Assembly: GCF_000315625.1 (NCBI RefSeq)
Contig: NW_005434665.1
Coordinates: 238,893 to 302,892 of the forward strand
Length of the DNA stretch: 64,000 nt
Source of the DNA: Guillardia theta CCMP2712
Taxonomy: Eukaryota; Protista; Cryptophyta
Direction: 5' to 3'
Below, piece by piece: positions 41,912 through 52,920 of the stretch. A program made the translations under genes and the position numbers. Every line of letters starts with the position of its first letter. The stretch's first letter is position 1. The notes beneath the pieces are model-generated. The model was given only the letters and a program-made list of their open reading frames with translations. It did not search any database and had not been told where the DNA came from.

Positions 41912-44900
41912 TTAGGAAGAGGACTTGTCTGCCTTCTTGCTGTGAGCAAACGTCCTAGCCTCCTTCACAAGCTCGATGAGCCGCTCTCGCGAGCACGTGG
42001 CTGTCGAAAGTGTCAGGGGCCATGTGGGAGCAGGAGGGAGGAAGACCTTTGAGGAAGGGATGCTCGAGGAGATCCGCGGAAGACGCTCCTGCGAAGAGGT
42101 CAGCGCCGTCAAGATTCACTTGCAGTCGCTCACGTTCAGAGGGTTCAGCAGCAAGAGTCTTCTCGTAGAAATCTTTGATATGCCTGTCGGGAGAATGAGC
42201 TCCCTCCTCTCTGCCTCTTCCTCATCCTCCTCTACTGCCGCTCCCTCCCTCTTGGTCCTCTTCATCCGCTTCCTTGTCCTCATTCCTCGCTATTCCTTTC
42301 CTCTTTCATCCTTCCCTCTCGCCTCCCTCCATTCCTCTGCTGTTTGTTTTCTCCTGTCTCCTCTCCCTCTCCATTTCCGCGTTGCATCTCACGCACTTCA
42401 CCTCCTGCTCTATCCTCTACTTCGTCCTTACCTCCCCCACGACTTTGACTTGAGCTTAGGAGGGCCCTTGGTCGCTATGAGGTAGAGGGCGCGCAGGGGA
42501 TCCTGCGAGGAAGTTGTAAGGAGGAGCGCAGGAGGGAGCTGGGAGACCTGACGGAGGTAAGGAGGTTCTCCTTCAGCCATTTCTGAGAGACGATCAATGA
42601 GGATGAGACAGGGACAAGGAGGAGACAAGAGAAGGGACGGGAACAAGAAAAGATGCAAGAGGAGGGGAGGAGAGGAGATAGGAGAGGAAACGAGAAGAGG
42701 AGAGGCGAGAATGGAAGGAGAGGAGAGGAGAGGGAAGGGGAGAGAGAAGAGGAGAGGAGAGGAGAGGAGAGGAGAGGAGAGGAGAGGAGAGAAGAGGGAG
42801 AAGGGAAGGAGAGGAGAGGAGAGGAGAGGGGAGANNNNNNNNNNNNNNNNNNNNNNNNNNNNNNNNNNNNNNNNNNNNNNNNNNNNNNNNNNNNNNNNNN
42901 NNNNNNNNNNNNNNNNNNNNNNNNNNNNNNNNNNACAGACGAGAGTGGGAGGGAGTAGAGAGATTGGGGCGGGGGGATAGGAGGTGGAAGAGAAGGAAGC
43001 AAGTATTACATCTCCTCGTCTTCCTCCTGCATCTCGATGTCTTCGTCCTGTCCTCTCTCCTTGGTCTCCTGCCCCTACCATCACCTGATGCTACCAACCC
43101 GGCATGTCCTCACCGTCTTCTCCTCCTCCTCCTTCTCCTCCTCCTCCTTCTCCTCCCCTTCCTTGTCCTGGCCCTCTGCCTTCATGAACGCCTTCACGAG
43201 CGGCAACTCCGTGACCTGACCAACCGTCAAACAGCGCAGGCGAGAGGAGAGGAGGAGAGGAGAGGAGGAGAGGAGAGGAGGAGAGGAGAGGAGGAGAGGA
43301 GAAGAGGAGAGGAGAGGAGAGGAGAGGAGAGGAGACGGGAGAGGAGAGGAGGAGGAGGAGGAGAAGAGGAGAGGAGAGGAGAGGAGAGGAGAGGAGAGGA
43401 GAGGAGAGGAGAGGAGAGGAGAGGAGAGGAGAGGAGAGGAGAGGAGAGGGAGAAGGAAGGAGAGGAGTGGAGGGGAGGTAAAGCAACCGATCAAAGTTAT
43501 TCCCATAGACCAGATGTCGACCTTCTGATCATAATGCTGTACAAGGAGAGTGAGGTGGGAGTGGGGATGGGGTCAGCGAGATACCTGGCCTCTCACAAGC
43601 TCCGGAGCCATCCAGTAGTAGGTGCCTGCCATGGACTGCCGCACCCGTTGCTCCTCTGTCAACTACAAGAAAATCAGAGAACGAGGAGGAGGAGGAGGAG
43701 GAGGAGGAGGACGAGGAGGAGGAGTGAGGATCAGGAGCAGGAGCAGGAGGAGCAGGAGAAACTCAAGCAACCTGCACGCAGAAGCCGAAGTCCGCGATCT
43801 TCACTTGACCGGCGGAATTGACGAGGAGGTTGTCAGACTTGATGTCTCTATGAACTCGCCCCTGAGAGGAAGAGTGAGGAGGGGGGAGGGAGGAGATGAA
43901 GCAGCAAGTCAGTGAGGAGGGCAGAGGCGAGGAGGGTGCGGAAGTTTGCGGATGCTGGAGCTAGAAACAGAGGAGACATGACATGGAATGACCTTCTCGT
44001 GGATGAATTCAAGTCCTTCCATGGCTGGACGCAAAAATCCTGCGTGCATGAAGTGAGGGGAAGGCAAGCTGATAGGAGGGAAGGGAAGGAGGAGGGAGGG
44101 GGAGAGGGAGGGAGACGGGGGCAAGAAGGGAGGAGGGTAACATGGGGCGAGGAGTGGAGGAGCAGCGATCAGAAGGGAGACGAGGACGACAGCAGTTGGC
44201 CTCGCAGAGGTGTACAGGGACTCGTTTGTTGCACCTGCAATCTCTTCCTCCATGAACTTCTTGCCGTTAGAGAAGTGACTCTTGACAAACAGCGTGAGGA
44301 GAGAAGGAAAGAGAGGAGAGATGAGGAGACTTGGATCAGCGAAGTCAGCGATCCGCCGTCCATGTACTCCATCACGACCTGTTGACAAGTGCGGAGAGTC
44401 AAGGGAGGCCTCGAACGACGTCATCAGTTTCACGTACCCAGAGATGCTTGTCGTGGATGAAACTCTTGATGTACTGGAACATCGTGTGAGCATCTCTCGA
44501 TGAATGTTGTAGTTTTTTGTATTGCTTGCTTGCTTGTTTGTTTGTTTTTGATGTAGTTGTAGTTGTAGTTGGTGTAGTTGGTGTTGGTGTTGGTGTTGTT
44601 ATTGTTGTTGTTATAGTTGTTGTGTTATAGTTGTTGTTGTTGTTGTTGACCTCACCTTCACTGTGCAAGGGTGGGAGCACATCTTCATCATCGCAATCTC
44701 ATTCTGCAGAGCTGATTGCACTATTCCCCCCTGCGGAACATCTTCACTTTCACCCTCTTCACCTCCACCTTCACTGCACTTGTTCTGACAGTCGTAGCTT
44801 CTTCAGGGCAACCTGAGGGAACTTTGACATGTTGGCACGCGCATAGAGATCCCTTCAACCTTGTCTCCTCCTCTCTTTGGACGACCGAGATAAATCGTTC

Positions 44901-47900
44901 CAGTGCACCCCTGGCCACACAACGTTGAATTTAAGGAGAGTAGGTAGAGGAGGGAGGGTGTGGTGGTGGTGGTGGTTGAGGAGGAGGAGGAGGTGGAGGA
45001 GATGGAAGTGGTGGTGGTGGAGGAGGAGATGGAGGAGGAGATGGAGGAGGAGATGGAGGAAGAGGTGGTGGTGGAGGAGGAGATGGAGGAGGAGATGGAG
45101 GAAGAGGTGGTGGTGGAGGAGATGGAGGAGGAGATGGAGGAGGAGATGGAGGAGGAGAAGATGGAGGAAGACGAGGAGGAATGTGGGAGGGGGATGAGAA
45201 GGGGATATGGAACGTGGGCAGCAGGACTCCAGGAATGAGAAAGAAGTTTCGAACCTGCCCGACAGCTTTCTTGGAGATTTCAAACTCGATCGATGGATCA
45301 GTTGTTTCGAACTGGAGGGAAAATTAACCTCTTTCTCCCTCCCTCCAGCCTCTCCTCTCCTGGTACCCTCCACATTCTTCACCACGTCCTTCTCCCTTCT
45401 CCCTTCTCCACTCCTCCTCCCCTTCTGCCTCTACCCTCCTCCGCTTCCCTCTCCTTGTCCTCCCCCTCTCCTCGAACACGCCTCCCTCCCTCCCAACTGA
45501 TTCTATCGCTCACTTGCACGGCTTCCCGCATGTCTCGGGAGGCCACAGACTTCGTCGGCAGAGCAGGAAGACCACCTGAAGGTAAGATGAACGAAGTGGC
45601 GATGGAGGAGGAGGAGGGGATGTTTTTTCCTTCAGCAGGAGGAGGAGGAGGAGGAGGAGGATGACGATGAGGAGGAGCAGGAGGAGGAGCAGGAGGAGGA
45701 GGATGACGATGAGGAGAAGCAGGAGGAGGAGCAGGAGGAGGTCAGGACAGGGTTGTCAAGAGGGTGAGGACGGAAGGGCAGGTAAGAGAGACTCGATTGT
45801 TCTTCGTGCCTTTCTCCGTGTGGAACTTCAACACGTCGAGCAGCTCATCGATGTGCTCCATGGCCTGCGGTGTTTGAGAACAGAAGGGTGGGCAGAGTGA
45901 GCAGAGAGGGGAGGGGAGGAGATGAGATGAGAGGAGCGGAGAAGAGCTGAACCTCCTCCGGCGAGATGTTGGCCTGTTTCAGCAGACTCTCCCAACCAGG
46001 TGGGAGACCCTTGAGCCCTGTCGACTGTTCGACAGTCAGCGACAGCAAGGACGAGGAGGGGGGAGGAACAGCACCGATGTTGGGTCAGCAACGACTTTCA
46101 GATTGGAGTGTGAAGAGGAGGAGGAGGAGGAGTCCGTTCTGAGAAGAGGGATCAGACTCGGAAACGAGCACGAAGTGGTCTCATCACCTATCCCTGCCCA
46201 CAGGAGTAGAAGGATTCTTCATCCCAACACGAACCAGCTCGACGGTGAAGGGCTCAGCATACCCTCTCCTGCTGATCTCCAAGACAACCTGACACCAGAA
46301 GTCAGGGGAGGGGGAAGAAAGGAGGAGGGGGGGGGCGAGAGTTTGCAATGACGAATGTCAAGAGGTAGAGGAGGGGGATAGAGATAGGAGAGGGTAGAAG
46401 TAGAAGAAGGAAGCAGAAGGAGAGGAGGAGACGAGGAGAGGAGGAAGAGACGAAGTGGAGCAGGATGAAGCAAAAGGAGGAAGCAGCAGAAGAGCAGGAG
46501 CGAGAGCAGGAGCAGGACGATGATGAACCAGCACGGAGGATGGGGGGGGGGGGGCAGGAAGCGAGGACGAGGTAAGGACGAGGAGAGAACTGAAAGGTAA
46601 GAGGAGGAGCAACACACTTTTGATCCAACGGTTCCCTTGATCATTGGAGCGACCTCCTCCACCGTCATCCCCTGAATGTCCTGTACCAGCACATCACAAA
46701 CAAACCATCTACAGATCGTCTCCCTCTACTCCCCGACCTCCCTCCCCTCCCAAAACGGACATATCTTCTCCCTACCCTTCTCATCCCCTCCTGCCACCTC
46801 TCCTCCCCCAATCCCTCCTAAAGCCACCTCCACCACATCCTCCTCTCCCTACTTCTCTCTCCCTCTTCATCCCCTTTCCGCTTGCTCTCCTTCGCCTTCT
46901 CCTATCCTGTCCTCCGCCTTCGCCTCCTATCACCGTGCCTCCGACGGAGAGGATCGTGTCTCCAACAGAGATCATGTTGCTCTTCGCCGCTGCCCCGTGG
47001 GGATGGAGCTCGACCACCTGCTCCCGTTTCAACGAGGCGACATGAGAGTTGTCAAACCTTGAAGATCCCCTTGCTGTTGGGCTTCAGCAGCGCTCCTATC
47101 CCTACCAGGCTCTCGCTGCTGGGCTCGCTGCTAGCCTTGTTCTTCCTCCCTTCCTGTCGCTCAGCCTCCGACGCCTCCTGCCTCTTGCTGCTCTTGGCTC
47201 GCTCGTCCTGGCTCGAGCTCTTGCTCTTGCCGCTGCTCATGTAGTCTATCGCAGACTCCAGGTCATTCTGGCAGGCAGCGAGGGCAGCAGTCACCGACTT
47301 GTAGTCGTATCCCATCCCCACCAGTGTTGCGGTGTTGGACGCAAAGCTCGAGGCCTCTTCCCGCCCATGAGCCAAGCTCTTGTGGTAGCTGATGTTGCTG
47401 TCCACCCTCCTGCCTCCTCCGCTCGCATCGAACGTGTCTGGTCGCTCAGTGCCGACCGAGGAGGCGATGGAAGTGTGGAAGGCGTCGGCCTCTATTGCAG
47501 TGGAGGCTCGAGAGCTCGGAGAGAAGTCATCGGGAAAGTCCGTCGGCATCTCAGTGGCTGCTGTAATGCAGGAGGCGTGAGAGGTTCTCGCGGAGAAGAT
47601 TTCGTCCCGCGCAGTCCCGTAGCCTCCATCGGTAGAGACCGAGTCAACGCCAGCCCGCGAGCTCGTCTCAGAGCCGTCAGAGATGCTCGACAGGTAGTCA
47701 GCATGGTCCTTGTCTGTGAGGGGAACGAGCTCGGGGCTGATGATAATGTTGTTAAGGGGCGATCGGTTCTTGTTCTCCCTCAGCCACTTCTCGATCGCCC
47801 ATTTCTCGTAGATGTGACCGTCTGCCGCCCTCACGGGCGTCTTGATCGGCTCACACGTCAGCACACACTCTCCCCAGTCCTTGGTCGGAGTTTTGTTCTT

Positions 47901-49471
47901 GCGCGCGATCTCCGACGGCAGCACCAGCCTCTTCCCAGCCTGGATCGACGGCGTCGGTTCTCTTCCTTGCCAGTGGTTGCTGTTGGCAGGGCTCTTGCTA
48001 CTTTCCTCTTCCTTTGGCGATGGCACGTGCTTCGGCTCTACCGGCTTCTTCGACGAGGCGCTACGAGGGTCCTCCGCTGCTGCCCTTGAGTCGTTCCTTC
48101 TCGGCGACGGCTCCTCCACTCGCTCTCGAGAGCTTGCAGGAGGTTTTTCTTCTTCCGTCCTGGGAGGTGTCAGGAAGCCTTCCGGCTGGTCGTTGGCACG
48201 GTAGGTTGGAGTGCTCGGCTCAGAGGAGGCGTGAGTTGGTTTCCTCGTTGCCGGCGACTTGAAGTCTGGTTTCGAAGGAAGGGGCCCTTGCTCCCTCTCC
48301 ATCTGCTTGAACAGGTCTCTCGTCTTCGCTGCTCGCTCGGTCATACTGTGAGTTATGCTCTGGCCATACATCCTGCTCACTCCACTCCTATCCTCCTCCG
48401 CCTTCTTCCTTGAGGTCTCTCTCAATACGTCGCTGTCCGAGTGCTGCCGGGGGAGTTTTGGAACGCCAGGTTTGACCTCGGCAGCTTGACGTTCGGGCCC
48501 CTTGCCAACCTTCTCGTCTCTGCCTCCTCCGTCGTTTCCTCGCTCAGGCTTCTCTTCTCTTTCGCCGCGCTCAGCCCTCTTTGGCGCTTTCTCGCTCTTG
48601 CCCGCAGCAGCGTTGCCATCCTTGTACTTGTCAAGCTCTGCCAGCGCCTCTTCGAGTTGCTTCTTGTACATGTCTCTTTCCTTCTCGCACTGCTCCTTCT
48701 CGCTCCGCAGCCTCTTGCACTCAGCATCCAGCTTCTTGACTTCCTCTCGAAGTGAACCATCTCCTCGCCCACGCAGGGCGCGGGCCTCCGCCTCCGCCCT
48801 GTCTTTCGCTTTCCTGGGAGCTGATCAATAATAGGAACGAGGATTCACTCAAGGATAGGGAGGAAGCGTCTCCTCACCTCAAAGTCTCGTTCTTCGATAT
48901 CTCGAAGTCTAATTCTTCTCTGACCTTGTCCAAGGTCTTGTATAGCTGGAAAGATTCGTCAGCCCCATGGCATAAAAGATTACAATCAGATTGTTGCATC
49001 ACAGTTCTATGGTTGATGACACAGAGACCAGCAGACATTTCAGCATCGTACAGTAAGTTGGAAGACTCGAGTCGCTTCTAGAATCTGCTTTGTTCCTACA
49101 TCTCCATGACAGAATAGCTACAACTTGATTGACTAGTTGCTTGATTGACTAGTTGGACATGTTAAAGTACGAAATGCTGTCGCTACCCAACAGTCTCTTT
49201 CCAGAATTTCTACAATCATGAAACATCGTCTTAAAAAAGTTCAATTCTTCACAACACCCTCATCGTGCGAACTGTGCAGAGGCTTGTAGATCGGAGGTGG
49301 TACAAAAGAGTCTTCCATTCTCATGAGACAACACGAGCCGCATTGAAGCGAAGCATGCGTGATGCTCTGGATCAAGTGCAACACGATTCAAGCATGGTAC
49401 TTCACCTGCTCCATCTCCGTCTCCTCCATCGCCTCCTCCATGGCGCGGCTGAACCGCTCCGATACCGCCAT
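41912..49471 (-). CDS. STE20/PAK-family kinase fused to coiled-coil, U-box, UBA and PDZ domains, multi-exon
   Basis: U-box [33 protein letters not shown]; [28 protein letters not shown]; [46 protein letters not shown] switch [23 protein letters not shown]. Kinase [54 protein letters not shown]. Confidence 0.85.
42650..43450 (+). repeat. (GGAGA)n arrays on both sides of the gap region (42650-42834 and 43243-43450)
   Basis: Tandem pentamers. Confidence 0.9.
42835..42934. other. Assembly gap (100 N)
   Basis: Run of N. Confidence 1.
44958..45180 (+). repeat. Intronic GGA/TGG compound repeat (GGAGGAGGAGAT units)
   Basis: Tandem 12-mers interspersed with TGG runs. Confidence 0.9.
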
Positions 49472-50274: not shown

Positions 50275-52920
50275 TCACCACATGTTACATCGCTGCCTCG
50301 GGCTCATGTACGATCCCTGTAGGTCTCTCGTCAGAGTCCAAACATGAGAAACAGGCTCGGCCTACCGCAGGACACGAATACGCTTCCGCGAAAGATTCAA
50401 AGTTCATGAGGGGGCCGTTGACTCGTAGCTGCAGGAGGGGAGGTCAACCACCTTGGACCAGAGGCACGGGAGGGTTGTCACCTTGTTGGGGGAGTGTTCG
50501 TCAGTGAAGAGCTGCAGCTCCTCGGCCCTCTTCCTCTCAACGGTGCACCAATTCTGAGCCCAGGAGAGGAAGAAGAGCTTGTCCTCGTCCTTGGTCGACT
50601 TGCGGTGATACTTCTCCTGCATCACCGCCTGCAAGGCCTCGTACGAGATCTTTACGCCGCCCATGTCCGCAATGTTCTCCCCCAGTGTTAGAAGGCCGTT
50701 GACATGCCTTCCCTCCACCTTGAAGGAGGAGTAGAAGTGCTCAATGCATCGGGCTTTCTCCTCGAACCTCCTTGAGTCCGACATGGTCCACCAGTTTGCC
50801 AGAGTCCCTCGCCCACCAAACTTCCTCCCCTGATCGTCGAATCCATGAGTGATCTCATGCCCAAGAATGCCGCCCAGAGCTCCAAAGTTTCTTGCAAGAG
50901 GGTAAGACGCACTGAAAAATGGCTCCTGCAGAATTCCAGCAGGGACGTATAGACCGTTTGCCGTGTAGCTGTAGAACGCATCCACCATAGTGGGGGAAGT
51001 GCTGCCCCAACGGTGAGGGTCGGTCTTTCTCGTCAAACGCTTGAACGAATGTTGGATGTACCATTCCGAAAGCTGCAAGCCGTTCCACAGGTACTTGTCG
51101 TCGACTAGATAGACTCCATTGTAGTAGTTCCAGTAGGATGGGCGGCCGATAGCAAAGAACATCACGTGCAGCTTCTCCAGCGCTGCCTGCTTGGTGGAGT
51201 TCTGCATCCAGTCGACCCTCAGCAAGTCGTCTTTGAAGGCAAGTTTCAACCGCATCAACATGTGCTCAGCTGCCATCTTACGCTTGGTGGAGAAGAAGTT
51301 GTTGACAAAGAGCTTGCCAACATCGTCTGGAAGGGCATTGATCGCAGCATGCATGCACTTCTTCCATCTTGGAACTTTCTTAACCTGACCAGTAACAATC
51401 CTTTGGAGCATGAAGCCTGTGTCTTCCATCTCTTTGTCCATATCTGCACCCAGCACAAATGCAAGTCGAAATAGCAGATAAGCCTTGATGCTGTCCAGAT
51501 CAGCCTGCATTAGCATCAGTAAAACATGGAGAACTTGAGGTCAAAAAATTACCTTGACGAGATATTTGTTCATGGATTCGAAGTAAGGCGAGTTTCTGAT
51601 CATGATTGTTATCTTGTCTGCGATGGTATCTGCCTGCGAGTGATAGGTGCCAGCCATTGCATTGATGAACCGCTTGAGATGGAGAGCAGGACAGAGTTTC
51701 TCGAGCTCTTCGATGTCGTAAGGTTGCGCTCGCTCCACCCTCTGCTCCTGCGCTGAGGCAAATCTCTCGGCCAACGCTGTTTCCACCTCAAGAGACCTTT
51801 CCGCTGCGACTTTGGGCCATGTGGCCACATCGCATTCGGGCATAATCTTACAGACCTTGGTGAGCACATCAGTCGCCACGCGCTTGTAACCCTCCCTCTT
51901 GAGCTTCATGGATGGCTCACTCGAGATGTAGAAGTTGGGGGAGGGGAACGTGATTCCTCCCTGCATCAAGTACAATGCCGACTCTTCGGGCTTATCTGGA
52001 TTGCTCTCTACTGACCAATCATAGAACACCACCACGTTTGCCTTGTGCCACCAATACACGACCACGGTCAGTGAGACAAGGTCTTTGACCGCATGTACTT
52101 GTTTGATAAATGGCATCAGAGGAGAGATCCCAAGCGCATTGATCGCCGACGTATTCATGCAACTCCTAAAACATATTCATCAGAATTCAGCTTTCGCATG
52201 AGTTAGCTTCTAGGAATGTATCAAACCTGTAGAAAACGCCAGCATTGCTGTCCGAGTTTGCTATAATAGGGAGCAATCTTCGTGTGTTGTTTCTTTCCAC
52301 ACCATCCCATGCGTGGGCGAACTCTAACTGGTCTGGATTTAGCTTGTGGTTCTTAATGAAATTCCCGCAAGCATATTCGTAGAAGTTGTCGCACGGCGAT
52401 GCGCTGTTGTCCATCAATTGAGTCATGTCAGCCGGGAAGAGCTGCGAGGATGCCGGCAGCATGCTCTTGTTGGAAGGATTCCATGATTTCAGAAAATATT
52501 TAGACACTTGTATCACGACGAAGACGAATCCGCAAAAACAAACGGCTATGCCGAAAAACCAGGCAAGCCTTCGTCTCCAAATCTGAGCGGAACATGACAT
52601 GAATAGAAAACTTTCACTCGAGAATAATAAGTACCTTCTGTCCTTGTTTGCTATAGATAGGAACATCTTCAGGGACAAATGTCCCGTATCTGTTGTCAAC
52701 CAGCATCAGGTATCGAAGTCAAGCCGAAGACACTGAACAGGAGGAGGCCTTTTGAAGGCTTGCTGAGGGGTAGTATTGCGAGGTGGAGAAAAGAGAGCAA
52801 GGGGATCAAGCATAGCAAGAGTAACCAACATGAAAAAGGCGGCAAACACTTGGAGTCAAAGAGTTCTTAAGACTGCAGCTTCGGCATGCTCAACCTCTCC
52901 TACCTGTCCTCCCCCGCCAT
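50275..52920 (-). CDS. M13 family zinc metallopeptidase (neprilysin/ECE-like), type II membrane protein
   Basis: TM WFFGIAVCFCGFVFVVI, PCDNFYEYACG, VDAFY, GILQEPFF, GHEITHGFD, GENIAD, HSP, terminal CNMW*. Confidence 0.95.

What the first reader, a model, noticed from the sequence alone, without database searches (positions are those of the whole stretch)
41912..49471. Single polypeptide combining U-box E3, UBA, PDZ and PAK kinase
Seen: U-box, UBA and the first PDZ strands share one ORF (47052-48671), and compatible GT-AG junctions lead through the PDZ into the PAK switch. The link from switch to kinase near 45790-45630 is least certain. Known: U-box kinases exist in plants with RLCK-type kinases. 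I know of no PAK with this set. Inference: an integrated ubiquitin writer/reader, scaffold and kinase module.
Basis: partly seen in the sequence, partly recalled or inferred. Interest (0 to 1): 0.75.

Follow-up and report, generated by a model that had tools for sequence, protein, structure and literature searches.

The report
U-box, UBA, PDZ fused to PAK kinase
A cryptophyte alga (Guillardia theta) most likely encodes one 1,097-residue protein that joins a ubiquitin-ligase-type U-box, a ubiquitin-binding UBA, a PDZ scaffold domain and a PAK-type kinase; the public annotation splits it into two genes, and the combination is new but its function is untested.

Summary
On the minus strand, 49471-41912, I built a 26-exon model of 3,294 nt (1,097 aa). 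It encodes a coiled-coil-like N-terminus, U-box, UBA, PDZ, a PAK autoinhibitory switch with a degenerate CRIB, and a complete PAK-type kinase.

The genome is Guillardia theta CCMP2712. Its annotation cuts the gene in two: GUITHDRAFT_133858 (798 aa, ending in read-through of intron 9) and GUITHDRAFT_133857 (235 aa, a kinase without its N-lobe). The doubtful link is a 234-nt GC-AG intron (45809-45576), and no GT donor keeps the frame there.

Single-gene evidence:
- Uncultured marine relatives carry U-box to kinase as one uninterrupted 856-codon genomic ORF, listed from eleven near-identical sequences on over 30 metagenome contigs.
- A third lineage is colinear.
- The missing N-lobe exons lie between the two annotated models.

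The N gap (42835-42934) sits inside intron 21 beside an (AGAGG)n array. The flanking exons abut exactly as in the relative.

The U-box passes Pfam marginally, and its predicted fold matches solved U-boxes.

E3 activity, ubiquitin binding and kinase activity are all inferred.

This is a new variant of a known kind, of moderate interest. Another first-reader note flags a PDZ-CRIB-PAK paralogue elsewhere in this genome.

The parts
41912..49471 (-). Whole coding region, 26 exons, 3,294 nt, 1,097 aa. Exons (high-low): 49471-49406, 48945-48878, 48813-47058, 47017-46934, 46680-46618, 46288-46188, 46138-46075, 46024-45953, 45864-45810, 45575-45514, 45311-45255, 44910-44860, 44812-44790, 44746-44656, 44473-44438, 44378-44331, 44280-44235, 44039-43993, 43861-43772, 43662-43585, 43536-43488, 42582-42548, 42502-42432, 42183-42134, 42088-42047, 42000-41912
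   Evidence: All junctions keep the frame, there are no internal stops, and all introns are GT-AG except intron 9. The exon 2/3 boundary was corrected by reading the output against P0001.
48500..49471 (-). N-terminal charged, heptad-like region, probably a coiled coil (exons 1-2 and the start of exon 3)
   Evidence: Read from the sequence. It is conserved in the Tara relative upstream of the long ORF (L001:49-387). The coiled coil itself is inferred, not computed.
47706..47957 (-). U-box module. The Pfam core is 47736-47867.
   Evidence: Pfam U-box 22.1 bits against a cut-off of 21.4. The module is conserved in 19 sequences with only one invariant Cys. AlphaFold core pLDDT is 85-90. The top Foldseek hits are all U-boxes; Prp19 reaches TM 0.80-0.82 at rmsd 1.3 over 54-55 residues.
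47241..47336 (-). UBA domain
   Evidence: Pfam UBA E 1.4e-5, 25.2 bits against a cut-off of 22.4. The hit is also present in P0003.
46229..47108 (-). PDZ domain spread over exons 3-6, interrupted by introns of 40, 253 and 329 nt
   Evidence: Pfam PDZ E 9.6e-11, 42.3 bits, on P0001, which uses these exons.
46075..46138 (-). Exon 7: Ser-rich remnant of the CRIB motif ([19 protein letters not shown])
   Evidence: In alignment A2 the paralogues have ISAPFNFQHKxHVQVDP at this position.
45810..46024 (-). Exons 8-9: PAK inhibitory-switch part of the PBD (GLKGLPPGW...[11 protein letters not shown])
   Evidence: Pfam PBD 24.7 bits against a cut-off of 21.3, profile positions 23-58 only. It aligns to the PAK2 autoinhibitory segment.
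45576..45809 (-). Intron 9, GC-AG, 234 nt. This is where the public annotation breaks the gene.
   Evidence: It is the only frame-keeping junction found. The relatives read through this point in a single exon.
42047..45311 (-). Protein kinase domain, PAK type, exons 11-25. It has [32 protein letters not shown] and WMAPE.
   Evidence: The orthologue's kinase is closest to PAK2 and PAK1 (E about 1e-71 to 1e-68).
42583..43487 (-). Intron 21. It holds the N gap 42835-42934 and (AGAGG)n/(GAGAG)n arrays.

Best explanation
This is one Guillardia theta gene, now annotated as two (GUITHDRAFT_133858 and GUITHDRAFT_133857). It encodes a 1,097-aa PAK-family kinase whose N-terminal regulatory region has been rebuilt. 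The order is coiled-coil-like segment, U-box, UBA, PDZ, a CRIB remnant without its GTPase-contact residues, an intact PAK inhibitory switch, and a catalytically complete kinase.

Shown here: the gene structure, the domain identities, and the same arrangement in related lineages, including one uninterrupted ORF.

Inferred: it arose when a cryptophyte PDZ-CRIB-PAK kinase fused with a member of a family of proteins carrying this U-box module. The kinase is probably held off by the switch docking on its C-lobe, as in PAK1. Release would then no longer depend on Rac/Cdc42 binding to the CRIB, but on something read by the new N-terminal domains: ubiquitin through the UBA, a C-terminal peptide through the PDZ, or auto-ubiquitination through an E2 recruited by the U-box. 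On that reading, phosphorylation and ubiquitination act on the same PDZ-recruited targets.
For: Identity and annotation: the large ORF is 100% identical to GUITHDRAFT_133858. GUITHDRAFT_133857 lies on the same contig and starts at Pkinase profile position 62 of 263, so it lacks the Gly-loop, the VAxK Lys and the alpha-C Glu. Those parts are encoded by exons 11-14, which lie between the two models in a consistent frame.

Single ORF in relatives: P0003 (856 aa) is one uninterrupted ORF on a Tara Oceans metagenome scaffold and carries U-box, UBA, PDZ, PBD and Pkinase. Eleven listed cluster members of 856 aa come from over 30 metagenome contigs of up to 22.6 kb. Lineage L009 is colinear, and FHTEKGGLPTLPT lies in one exon there. 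G. theta paralogue exons also run through that point.

Orthology of both halves: 70% identity (PDZ-switch) and 78-83% (kinase) to the P0003 lineage, against 35-43% and 52-65% to the paralogues.

Domains. The U-box fold is supported. The nearest solved kinases are PAK2 and PAK1.

CRIB: it is lost in this clade only.

Switch-kinase docking: ipSAE 0.78, best of 3 controls 0.00. That mark was reached by 51 of 78 solved complexes and 2 of 108 mismatched pairs. The runs agree in at least 84% of contacts and the partner's pLDDT is at least 73. The contacts fall on the activation-loop/alpha-EF and alpha-G regions.
Against: There is no transcript evidence for G. theta.

The key intron has a non-GT (GC) donor, and the public model ends in it, so a kinase-less 798-aa isoform may exist.

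The Hanusia phi transcript is partial and retains the short intron.

The U-box HMM score is only 0.7 bits above the cut-off.

The complex pass may be memory of the solved PAK1 autoinhibited structure, and it was run on the orthologue rather than the G. theta protein.

All activities (E3, ubiquitin binding, PDZ ligand, kinase) are untested.
Confidence: 0.8

Rival explanations
1. There are two separate genes, as in the public annotation: a U-box/UBA/PDZ/switch scaffold protein and an independent downstream kinase.
For: The NCBI/JGI models GUITHDRAFT_133858 and GUITHDRAFT_133857 are separate. The link needs a GC donor. An in-frame Met exists in exon 10.
Against: The annotated kinase lacks its N-lobe and includes a spurious piece of intron 21 in place of subdomain IX. 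The 21-residue tail of 133858 is not conserved in any relative. Relatives carry everything in one ORF. Only 234 nt separate the two parts.
Confidence: 0.06
2. It is one gene with two products: the full fusion, and a kinase-less 798-aa scaffold made by retaining the weak GC-AG intron 9.
For: The GC donor (GCACGA) is weaker than the GT donors of the other 24 introns. Retention gives a stop after 21 codons. The sister-species transcript shows intron retention elsewhere in the gene.
Against: There are no RNA data. The P0003 lineage has no intron here, so this would be specific to G. theta.
Confidence: 0.25
3. The U-box-like module is a binding domain without ligase activity, so the protein is a scaffolded kinase and not an E3-kinase.
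For: The HMM score is marginal. Pfam matches only profile positions 7-50 of 73. Weaker matches to zf-Nse and zf-NOSIP also appear. Model confidence outside the core is low.
Against: The fold matches active U-boxes (CHIP, PUB13, E4B, Prp19). The loop-1 hydrophobic residue (L44) and the loop-2 Pro (P78), which I take from background knowledge to be E2-contact positions, are invariant in 19 sequences.
Confidence: 0.3
4. It is an assembly chimera or a decaying gene around the N gap.
For: There is a gap of estimated length, flanked by microsatellites.
Against: Both sides of the gap belong to the same kinase. They are in order, in phase and without missing residues against P0003. No exon has a stop or a frameshift.
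Confidence: 0.03

Closest known systems
Group I p21-activated kinases (PAK1-3; Ste20/Cla4 type)
   Same: The kinase domain is closest to PAK2 and PAK1. The inhibitory-switch segment lies N-terminal of the kinase and is predicted to dock on the C-lobe. It has the PAK-style motifs DFGFC.Q and HRDIKSDN.
   Different: The CRIB consensus ISxPxxFxHxxHVG is replaced by a Ser-rich stretch. There are a U-box, UBA and PDZ upstream, where these kinases have proline-rich or PH regions.
Cryptophyte PDZ-CRIB-PAK kinases (G. theta GUITHDRAFT_81068 and 83971; MMETSP transcripts of Hanusia, Cryptomonas and others)
   Same: The same PDZ-switch-kinase core and order. They are the nearest paralogues, 52-65% identical in the kinase.
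   Different: They keep a full CRIB (Pfam PBD positions 2-58, 50-60 bits). They have no U-box, UBA or long N-terminus.
Plant U-box kinases (PUB32-35 and PUB50-55 type); comparison from background knowledge
   Same: A U-box and a protein kinase in one polypeptide.
   Different: The plant kinase is RLCK-like and precedes the U-box. Here the kinase is PAK-type and follows the U-box, and PDZ, UBA and the switch are present. This looks like an independent fusion.
Par6 (PB1-semiCRIB-PDZ) and ACK1/TNK2 (kinase-SH3-CRIB-UBA), as described in PMC8847673
   Same: CRIB-type elements combined with a PDZ (Par6) or with a kinase and a UBA (ACK1).
   Different: The domain order and the kinase class differ. 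Neither has a U-box.
Coiled-coil U-box ligases CHIP and Prp19
   Same: The U-box fold matches. A coiled-coil-like segment in the same protein suggests oligomers, which is an inference.
   Different: There are no TPR or WD40 substrate modules. The kinase, PDZ and UBA take their place.

Membership tests
PAK (STE20 group) kinases | The kinase domain is most similar to PAKs | tested here: met
   For P0003:480-856 the best solved relatives are PAK2, PAK1 and PAK3, E 4e-71 to 1e-68. The G. theta exons are 78-83% identical to that lineage.
PAK (STE20 group) kinases | Complete catalytic motifs (GxGxxG, VAxK, alpha-C Glu, HRD, DFG, APE) | tested here: met
   Read in exons 12-20: [33 protein letters not shown].
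PAK (STE20 group) kinases | PBD/autoinhibitory switch N-terminal of the kinase | tested here: met
   Pfam PBD 24.7 bits against a cut-off of 21.3, but profile positions 23-58 only. Docking is predicted with score 0.78 against a best control of 0.00; 51/78 solved complexes and 2/108 mismatched pairs reach that mark.
PAK (STE20 group) kinases | CRIB consensus ISxPxxFxHxxHVG | tested here: not met
   Alignment A2 shows [16 protein letters not shown] where the paralogues have ISAPFNFQHKxHVQVD.
PAK (STE20 group) kinases | Activation by GTP-bound Rac/Cdc42 | not testable with these tools
   This needs binding assays.
U-box E3 ligases | Pfam U-box at or above the gathering score | tested here: met
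   22.1 bits against 21.4, which is marginal. P0003 scores 22.6 and a module relative, P0167, scores 28.9.
U-box E3 ligases | U-box/RING fold without zinc ligands | tested here: met
   Core pLDDT is 85-90. The top Foldseek hits are all U-boxes. There is only one invariant Cys and no conserved His.
U-box E3 ligases | E2 binding and ubiquitin transfer | not testable with these tools
   Conserved loop residues L44 and P78 are compatible with E2 binding. Activity itself is untested.
UBA domain | Pfam UBA at or above the gathering score | tested here: met
   25.2 bits against 22.4. The MGY loop is present. Ubiquitin binding is untested.
PDZ domain | Pfam PDZ at or above the gathering score, with a carboxylate-binding loop | tested here: met
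   42.3 bits against 23.2 on P0001. A GIGA loop stands at the GLGF position.
Plant-type U-box kinases | RLCK-type kinase N-terminal of the U-box | tested here: not met
   The kinase is PAK-type and lies C-terminal of the U-box.

The most novel reading that the evidence does not exclude
This would be a PAK whose small-GTPase switch has been exchanged for a ubiquitin switch. With the CRIB contacts lost, release of the retained inhibitory switch would be driven by ubiquitin, either bound by the UBA or attached by the protein's own U-box. The protein would then be a self-contained circuit that reads ubiquitin, writes ubiquitin and phosphorylates PDZ-recruited targets. It would be the first STE20-group kinase with an E3 ligase in cis.
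Probability: 0.15. Interest if true: 0.75.

Novelty: new variant of a known kind. Interest (0 to 1): 0.45.

Why it matters
The result corrects a split and truncated annotation in the reference cryptophyte genome. It also defines a small conserved clade with this architecture: G. theta, Hanusia phi and at least two uncultured marine lineages.

In that clade a PAK kinase is joined in cis to a ubiquitin-ligase-type domain, a ubiquitin reader and a PDZ, and it has lost the CRIB residues that normally couple PAKs to Rho GTPases. If the ligase and kinase are both active, this is a natural single-chain case of phosphorylation-ubiquitination coupling. It would also be a natural experiment in rewiring PAK autoinhibition.

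The wider PDZ-CRIB-PAK family in cryptophytes did not turn up in my literature searches.

Tried and rejected
- **GT donors for intron 9.** None keeps the frame.
- **Skipping exon 7 (46201 joined to 46024).** This is possible in frame, but it was rejected because the relatives and the public model keep the RVTADP segment.
- **Alternative last exon ending at 41955.** Rejected in favour of the 46-nt intron and the end at 41912, which the public model and the homologue's C-terminus support.
- **Synteny** between the Tara contig's neighbours and this window: none found.
- **Literature** on U-box or PDZ PAKs: nothing relevant.
- **Joined model.** It was not sent to any search or fold tool. The natural uninterrupted homologue P0003 and the public proteins P0001 and P0084 served as proxies.
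- **Full architecture outside this clade.** An exhaustive search with P0003:1-560 found it only in the P0004 and P0002 clusters. Other hits were multi-PDZ proteins, proteins with the U-box module alone, or PDZ-PBD fragments.
Full report
**What is there.** The window is from Guillardia theta CCMP2712. The large minus-strand ORF is 100% identical to GUITHDRAFT_133858, and earlier notes on neighbouring windows call the genome a cryptophyte. ORF 47052-48671(-), open up to 48824, carries Pfam U-box (aa 269-312, E 1.7e-4, 22.1 bits against a cut-off of 21.4) and UBA (aa 446-477, E 1.4e-5, 25.2 against 22.4). Its last residues, [15 protein letters not shown], are the first strands of a PDZ. A 40-nt GT-AG intron (47057-47018) joins them in frame to [28 protein letters not shown]. 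Two more exons complete the PDZ. The public 798-aa protein built from these exons scores PDZ 42.3 bits and PBD 24.7 bits.

**Gene model.** I guided the model with a natural homologue, P0003 (856 aa). tblastn places it colinearly on the minus strand from 47957 to about 41960. From this I derived 26 exons (49471-41912), totalling 3,294 nt and 1,097 codons, with no internal stop. Every intron is GT-AG except intron 9.
- Introns fall into two size classes, 40-64 nt and 88-460 nt. The long ones are CT/AG-rich low complexity.
- The joined model was not sent to any search or fold tool. Exons were handled by reference. P0003, P0001 and P0084 stood in for the joined product.

**The doubtful link.** After ...LKFHTEK-G the only frame-keeping junction is a GC donor at 45809 joined to the acceptor before 45575, a 234-nt intron. 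No GT donor works. This junction gives [11 protein letters not shown]. The relatives read EKGGLPTLPTR in a single exon, and two G. theta paralogues also run through this point inside one exon. The public model 133858 instead reads into the intron and stops after 21 residues that no relative shares.

**The downstream annotated model.** GUITHDRAFT_133857 (235 aa) begins at Pkinase profile position 62 of 263, so it has no N-lobe. It also replaces subdomain IX with a piece of intron 21. The missing Gly-loop, VALKK and NEIAMM exons (11-14) lie between the two annotated genes, in phase with the switch exons.

**The assembly gap.** N 42835-42934 lies in intron 21 (43487-42583), immediately next to an (AGAGG)n array. 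A second (GAGAG)n array lies upstream of it. The flanking exons give [16 protein letters not shown]|[12 protein letters not shown], against [28 protein letters not shown] in P0003. They are contiguous, in phase, and no residue is missing. So the gap affects only the intron length.

**Evidence for one polypeptide.**
- P0003 is one uninterrupted ORF (L001:1546-4116) on a Tara Oceans metagenome scaffold, which is genomic DNA. It carries U-box, UBA, PDZ, PBD and Pkinase.
- Eleven listed cluster members of 856 aa come from over 30 metagenome contigs of up to 22.6 kb.
- A third lineage, L009, has introns at other positions and shows the same order up to the kinase Gly-loop, where its contig ends.
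- The G. theta PDZ-switch part is 70% identical to P0003 and 35-43% to the paralogues. The kinase part is 78-83% against 52-65%. Both halves are therefore orthologous to the two halves of one ORF.
- A Hanusia phi transcript (84% identical) covers the N-terminus through the first PDZ strands, but it is partial and retains the short intron.
- No G. theta RNA evidence was obtained.

**Domain checks.**
- U-box: the module is conserved in 19 sequences, with one invariant Cys, no His pattern, and invariant L44 and P78. The AlphaFold model has core pLDDT 85-90. Its best PDB matches are all U-boxes: GmPUB13, LubX, Prp19 (TM 0.80-0.82, rmsd 1.3), CHIP and E4B.
- Kinase: the nearest solved structures are PAK2, PAK1 and PAK3, at E about 1e-71 to 1e-68. 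All catalytic motifs are present.
- Switch: Pfam PBD matches only profile positions 23-58. In alignment A2 the CRIB core ISAPFNFQHKxHVQVD of the paralogues is [16 protein letters not shown] here and GSSASSSSRLRVTAD in P0003. The GTPase-contact half is lost, while the inhibitory-switch helices are kept.
- Docking: a complex prediction of the orthologue's switch (493-566) against its kinase (567-856) scored 0.78, with the best of 3 controls at 0.00. That mark was reached by 51 of 78 solved complexes and 2 of 108 mismatched pairs. The runs agree in at least 84% of contacts, and the partner's pLDDT is at least 73. The contacts fall on the activation-loop/alpha-EF and alpha-G regions. A like complex (autoinhibited PAK1) is solved, so this shows likeness, not binding.

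**Family context.**
- G. theta has two paralogues with PDZ, a full CRIB and a PAK kinase but no U-box or UBA. They are at C163, about 98.7-101.2 kb, and C3, about 215.3-217.0 kb.
- MMETSP transcripts of Hanusia, Cryptomonas and other cryptophytes encode complete PDZ-PBD-kinase proteins.
- The U-box module also occurs alone in a G. theta paralogue (C2:612232-612543) and in many metagenome proteins of 100-900 aa.
- The simplest history is a fusion of these two families, followed by decay of the CRIB. This is inference.
- Word-based and exhaustive searches found the full set only in the G. theta/Hanusia, P0003 and P0004 clusters. Literature searches found no such PAK.

**How it probably works (inferred).** It is an active PAK kinase held off by its switch. 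The coiled-coil-like N-terminus may give dimers, as in CHIP, Prp19 and PAK1. The PDZ would tether it to a C-terminal peptide. The U-box would recruit an E2, and the UBA would read ubiquitin. Because the CRIB is degenerate, activation is likely independent of Rac/Cdc42 and may depend on ubiquitin or on the PDZ ligand.

**Verdict.** This is a new variant of a known kind, of moderate interest.

Noticed in passing
window 41912-44476 (public model GUITHDRAFT_133857): The public kinase model starts at an internal Met (MFQYIKSF...). It lacks the N-lobe, and it inserts about 34 residues translated from intron 21 ([34 protein letters not shown]) in place of the [28 protein letters not shown] exons.
   Followed up: yes
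G000:C163:98679-101200 (L002) and G000:C3:215289-216959 (L003): There are two G. theta paralogues with PDZ, a full CRIB and a PAK kinase. Their public models (GUITHDRAFT_81068, 396 aa, and 83971, 375 aa) lack the PDZ exons that Hanusia and MMETSP transcripts include, so they look truncated too.
   Followed up: partly
G000:C2:612232-612543 (L004:6233-6544, minus): A paralogue carries only the U-box-like module, 49% identical to P0003's module (52% to the window's) including the N-terminal I..G..L.PSE extension. The module is frequent in metagenome proteins that have no other Pfam domain.
   Followed up: partly
window 50404-51516 (-): The upstream neighbour on the same strand has an exon encoding an M13 (neprilysin/ECE-type) peptidase. 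It scores Pfam Peptidase_M13 170 bits and Peptidase_M13_N 92 bits, and has the HEITHGFD zinc motif.
   Followed up: partly
window 41912-49471, introns: Intron lengths are bimodal: thirteen of 40-64 nt, and twelve from 88 nt up (88-460 nt, plus the 905-nt intron 21 that holds the gap). The long ones are CT/AG-rich with pentanucleotide arrays, which translate as SSPLL-type or EERRG-type pseudo-ORFs on either strand.
   Followed up: partly
P0002 (Hanusia phi transcript), C-terminus: The sister-species transcript reads GIFKVRELVRVALLSKSRWLSCIPMGQLQRAT. This means it retains the equivalent of the 40-nt intron and shifts frame. It also has extra in-frame segments near the N-terminus where G. theta has introns 1 and 2.
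   Followed up: no
L007:11509-21101 (-) and L008:3144-9770 (-): The uncultured relative that carries the uninterrupted 856-codon ORF has a neighbouring uninterrupted ORF of more than 3,600 codons without Pfam hits. Its genome seems intron-poor compared with G. theta, and its taxon is not identified.
   Followed up: no
The tool says the filter also trips by chance. Nothing further was done with them.
   Followed up: no
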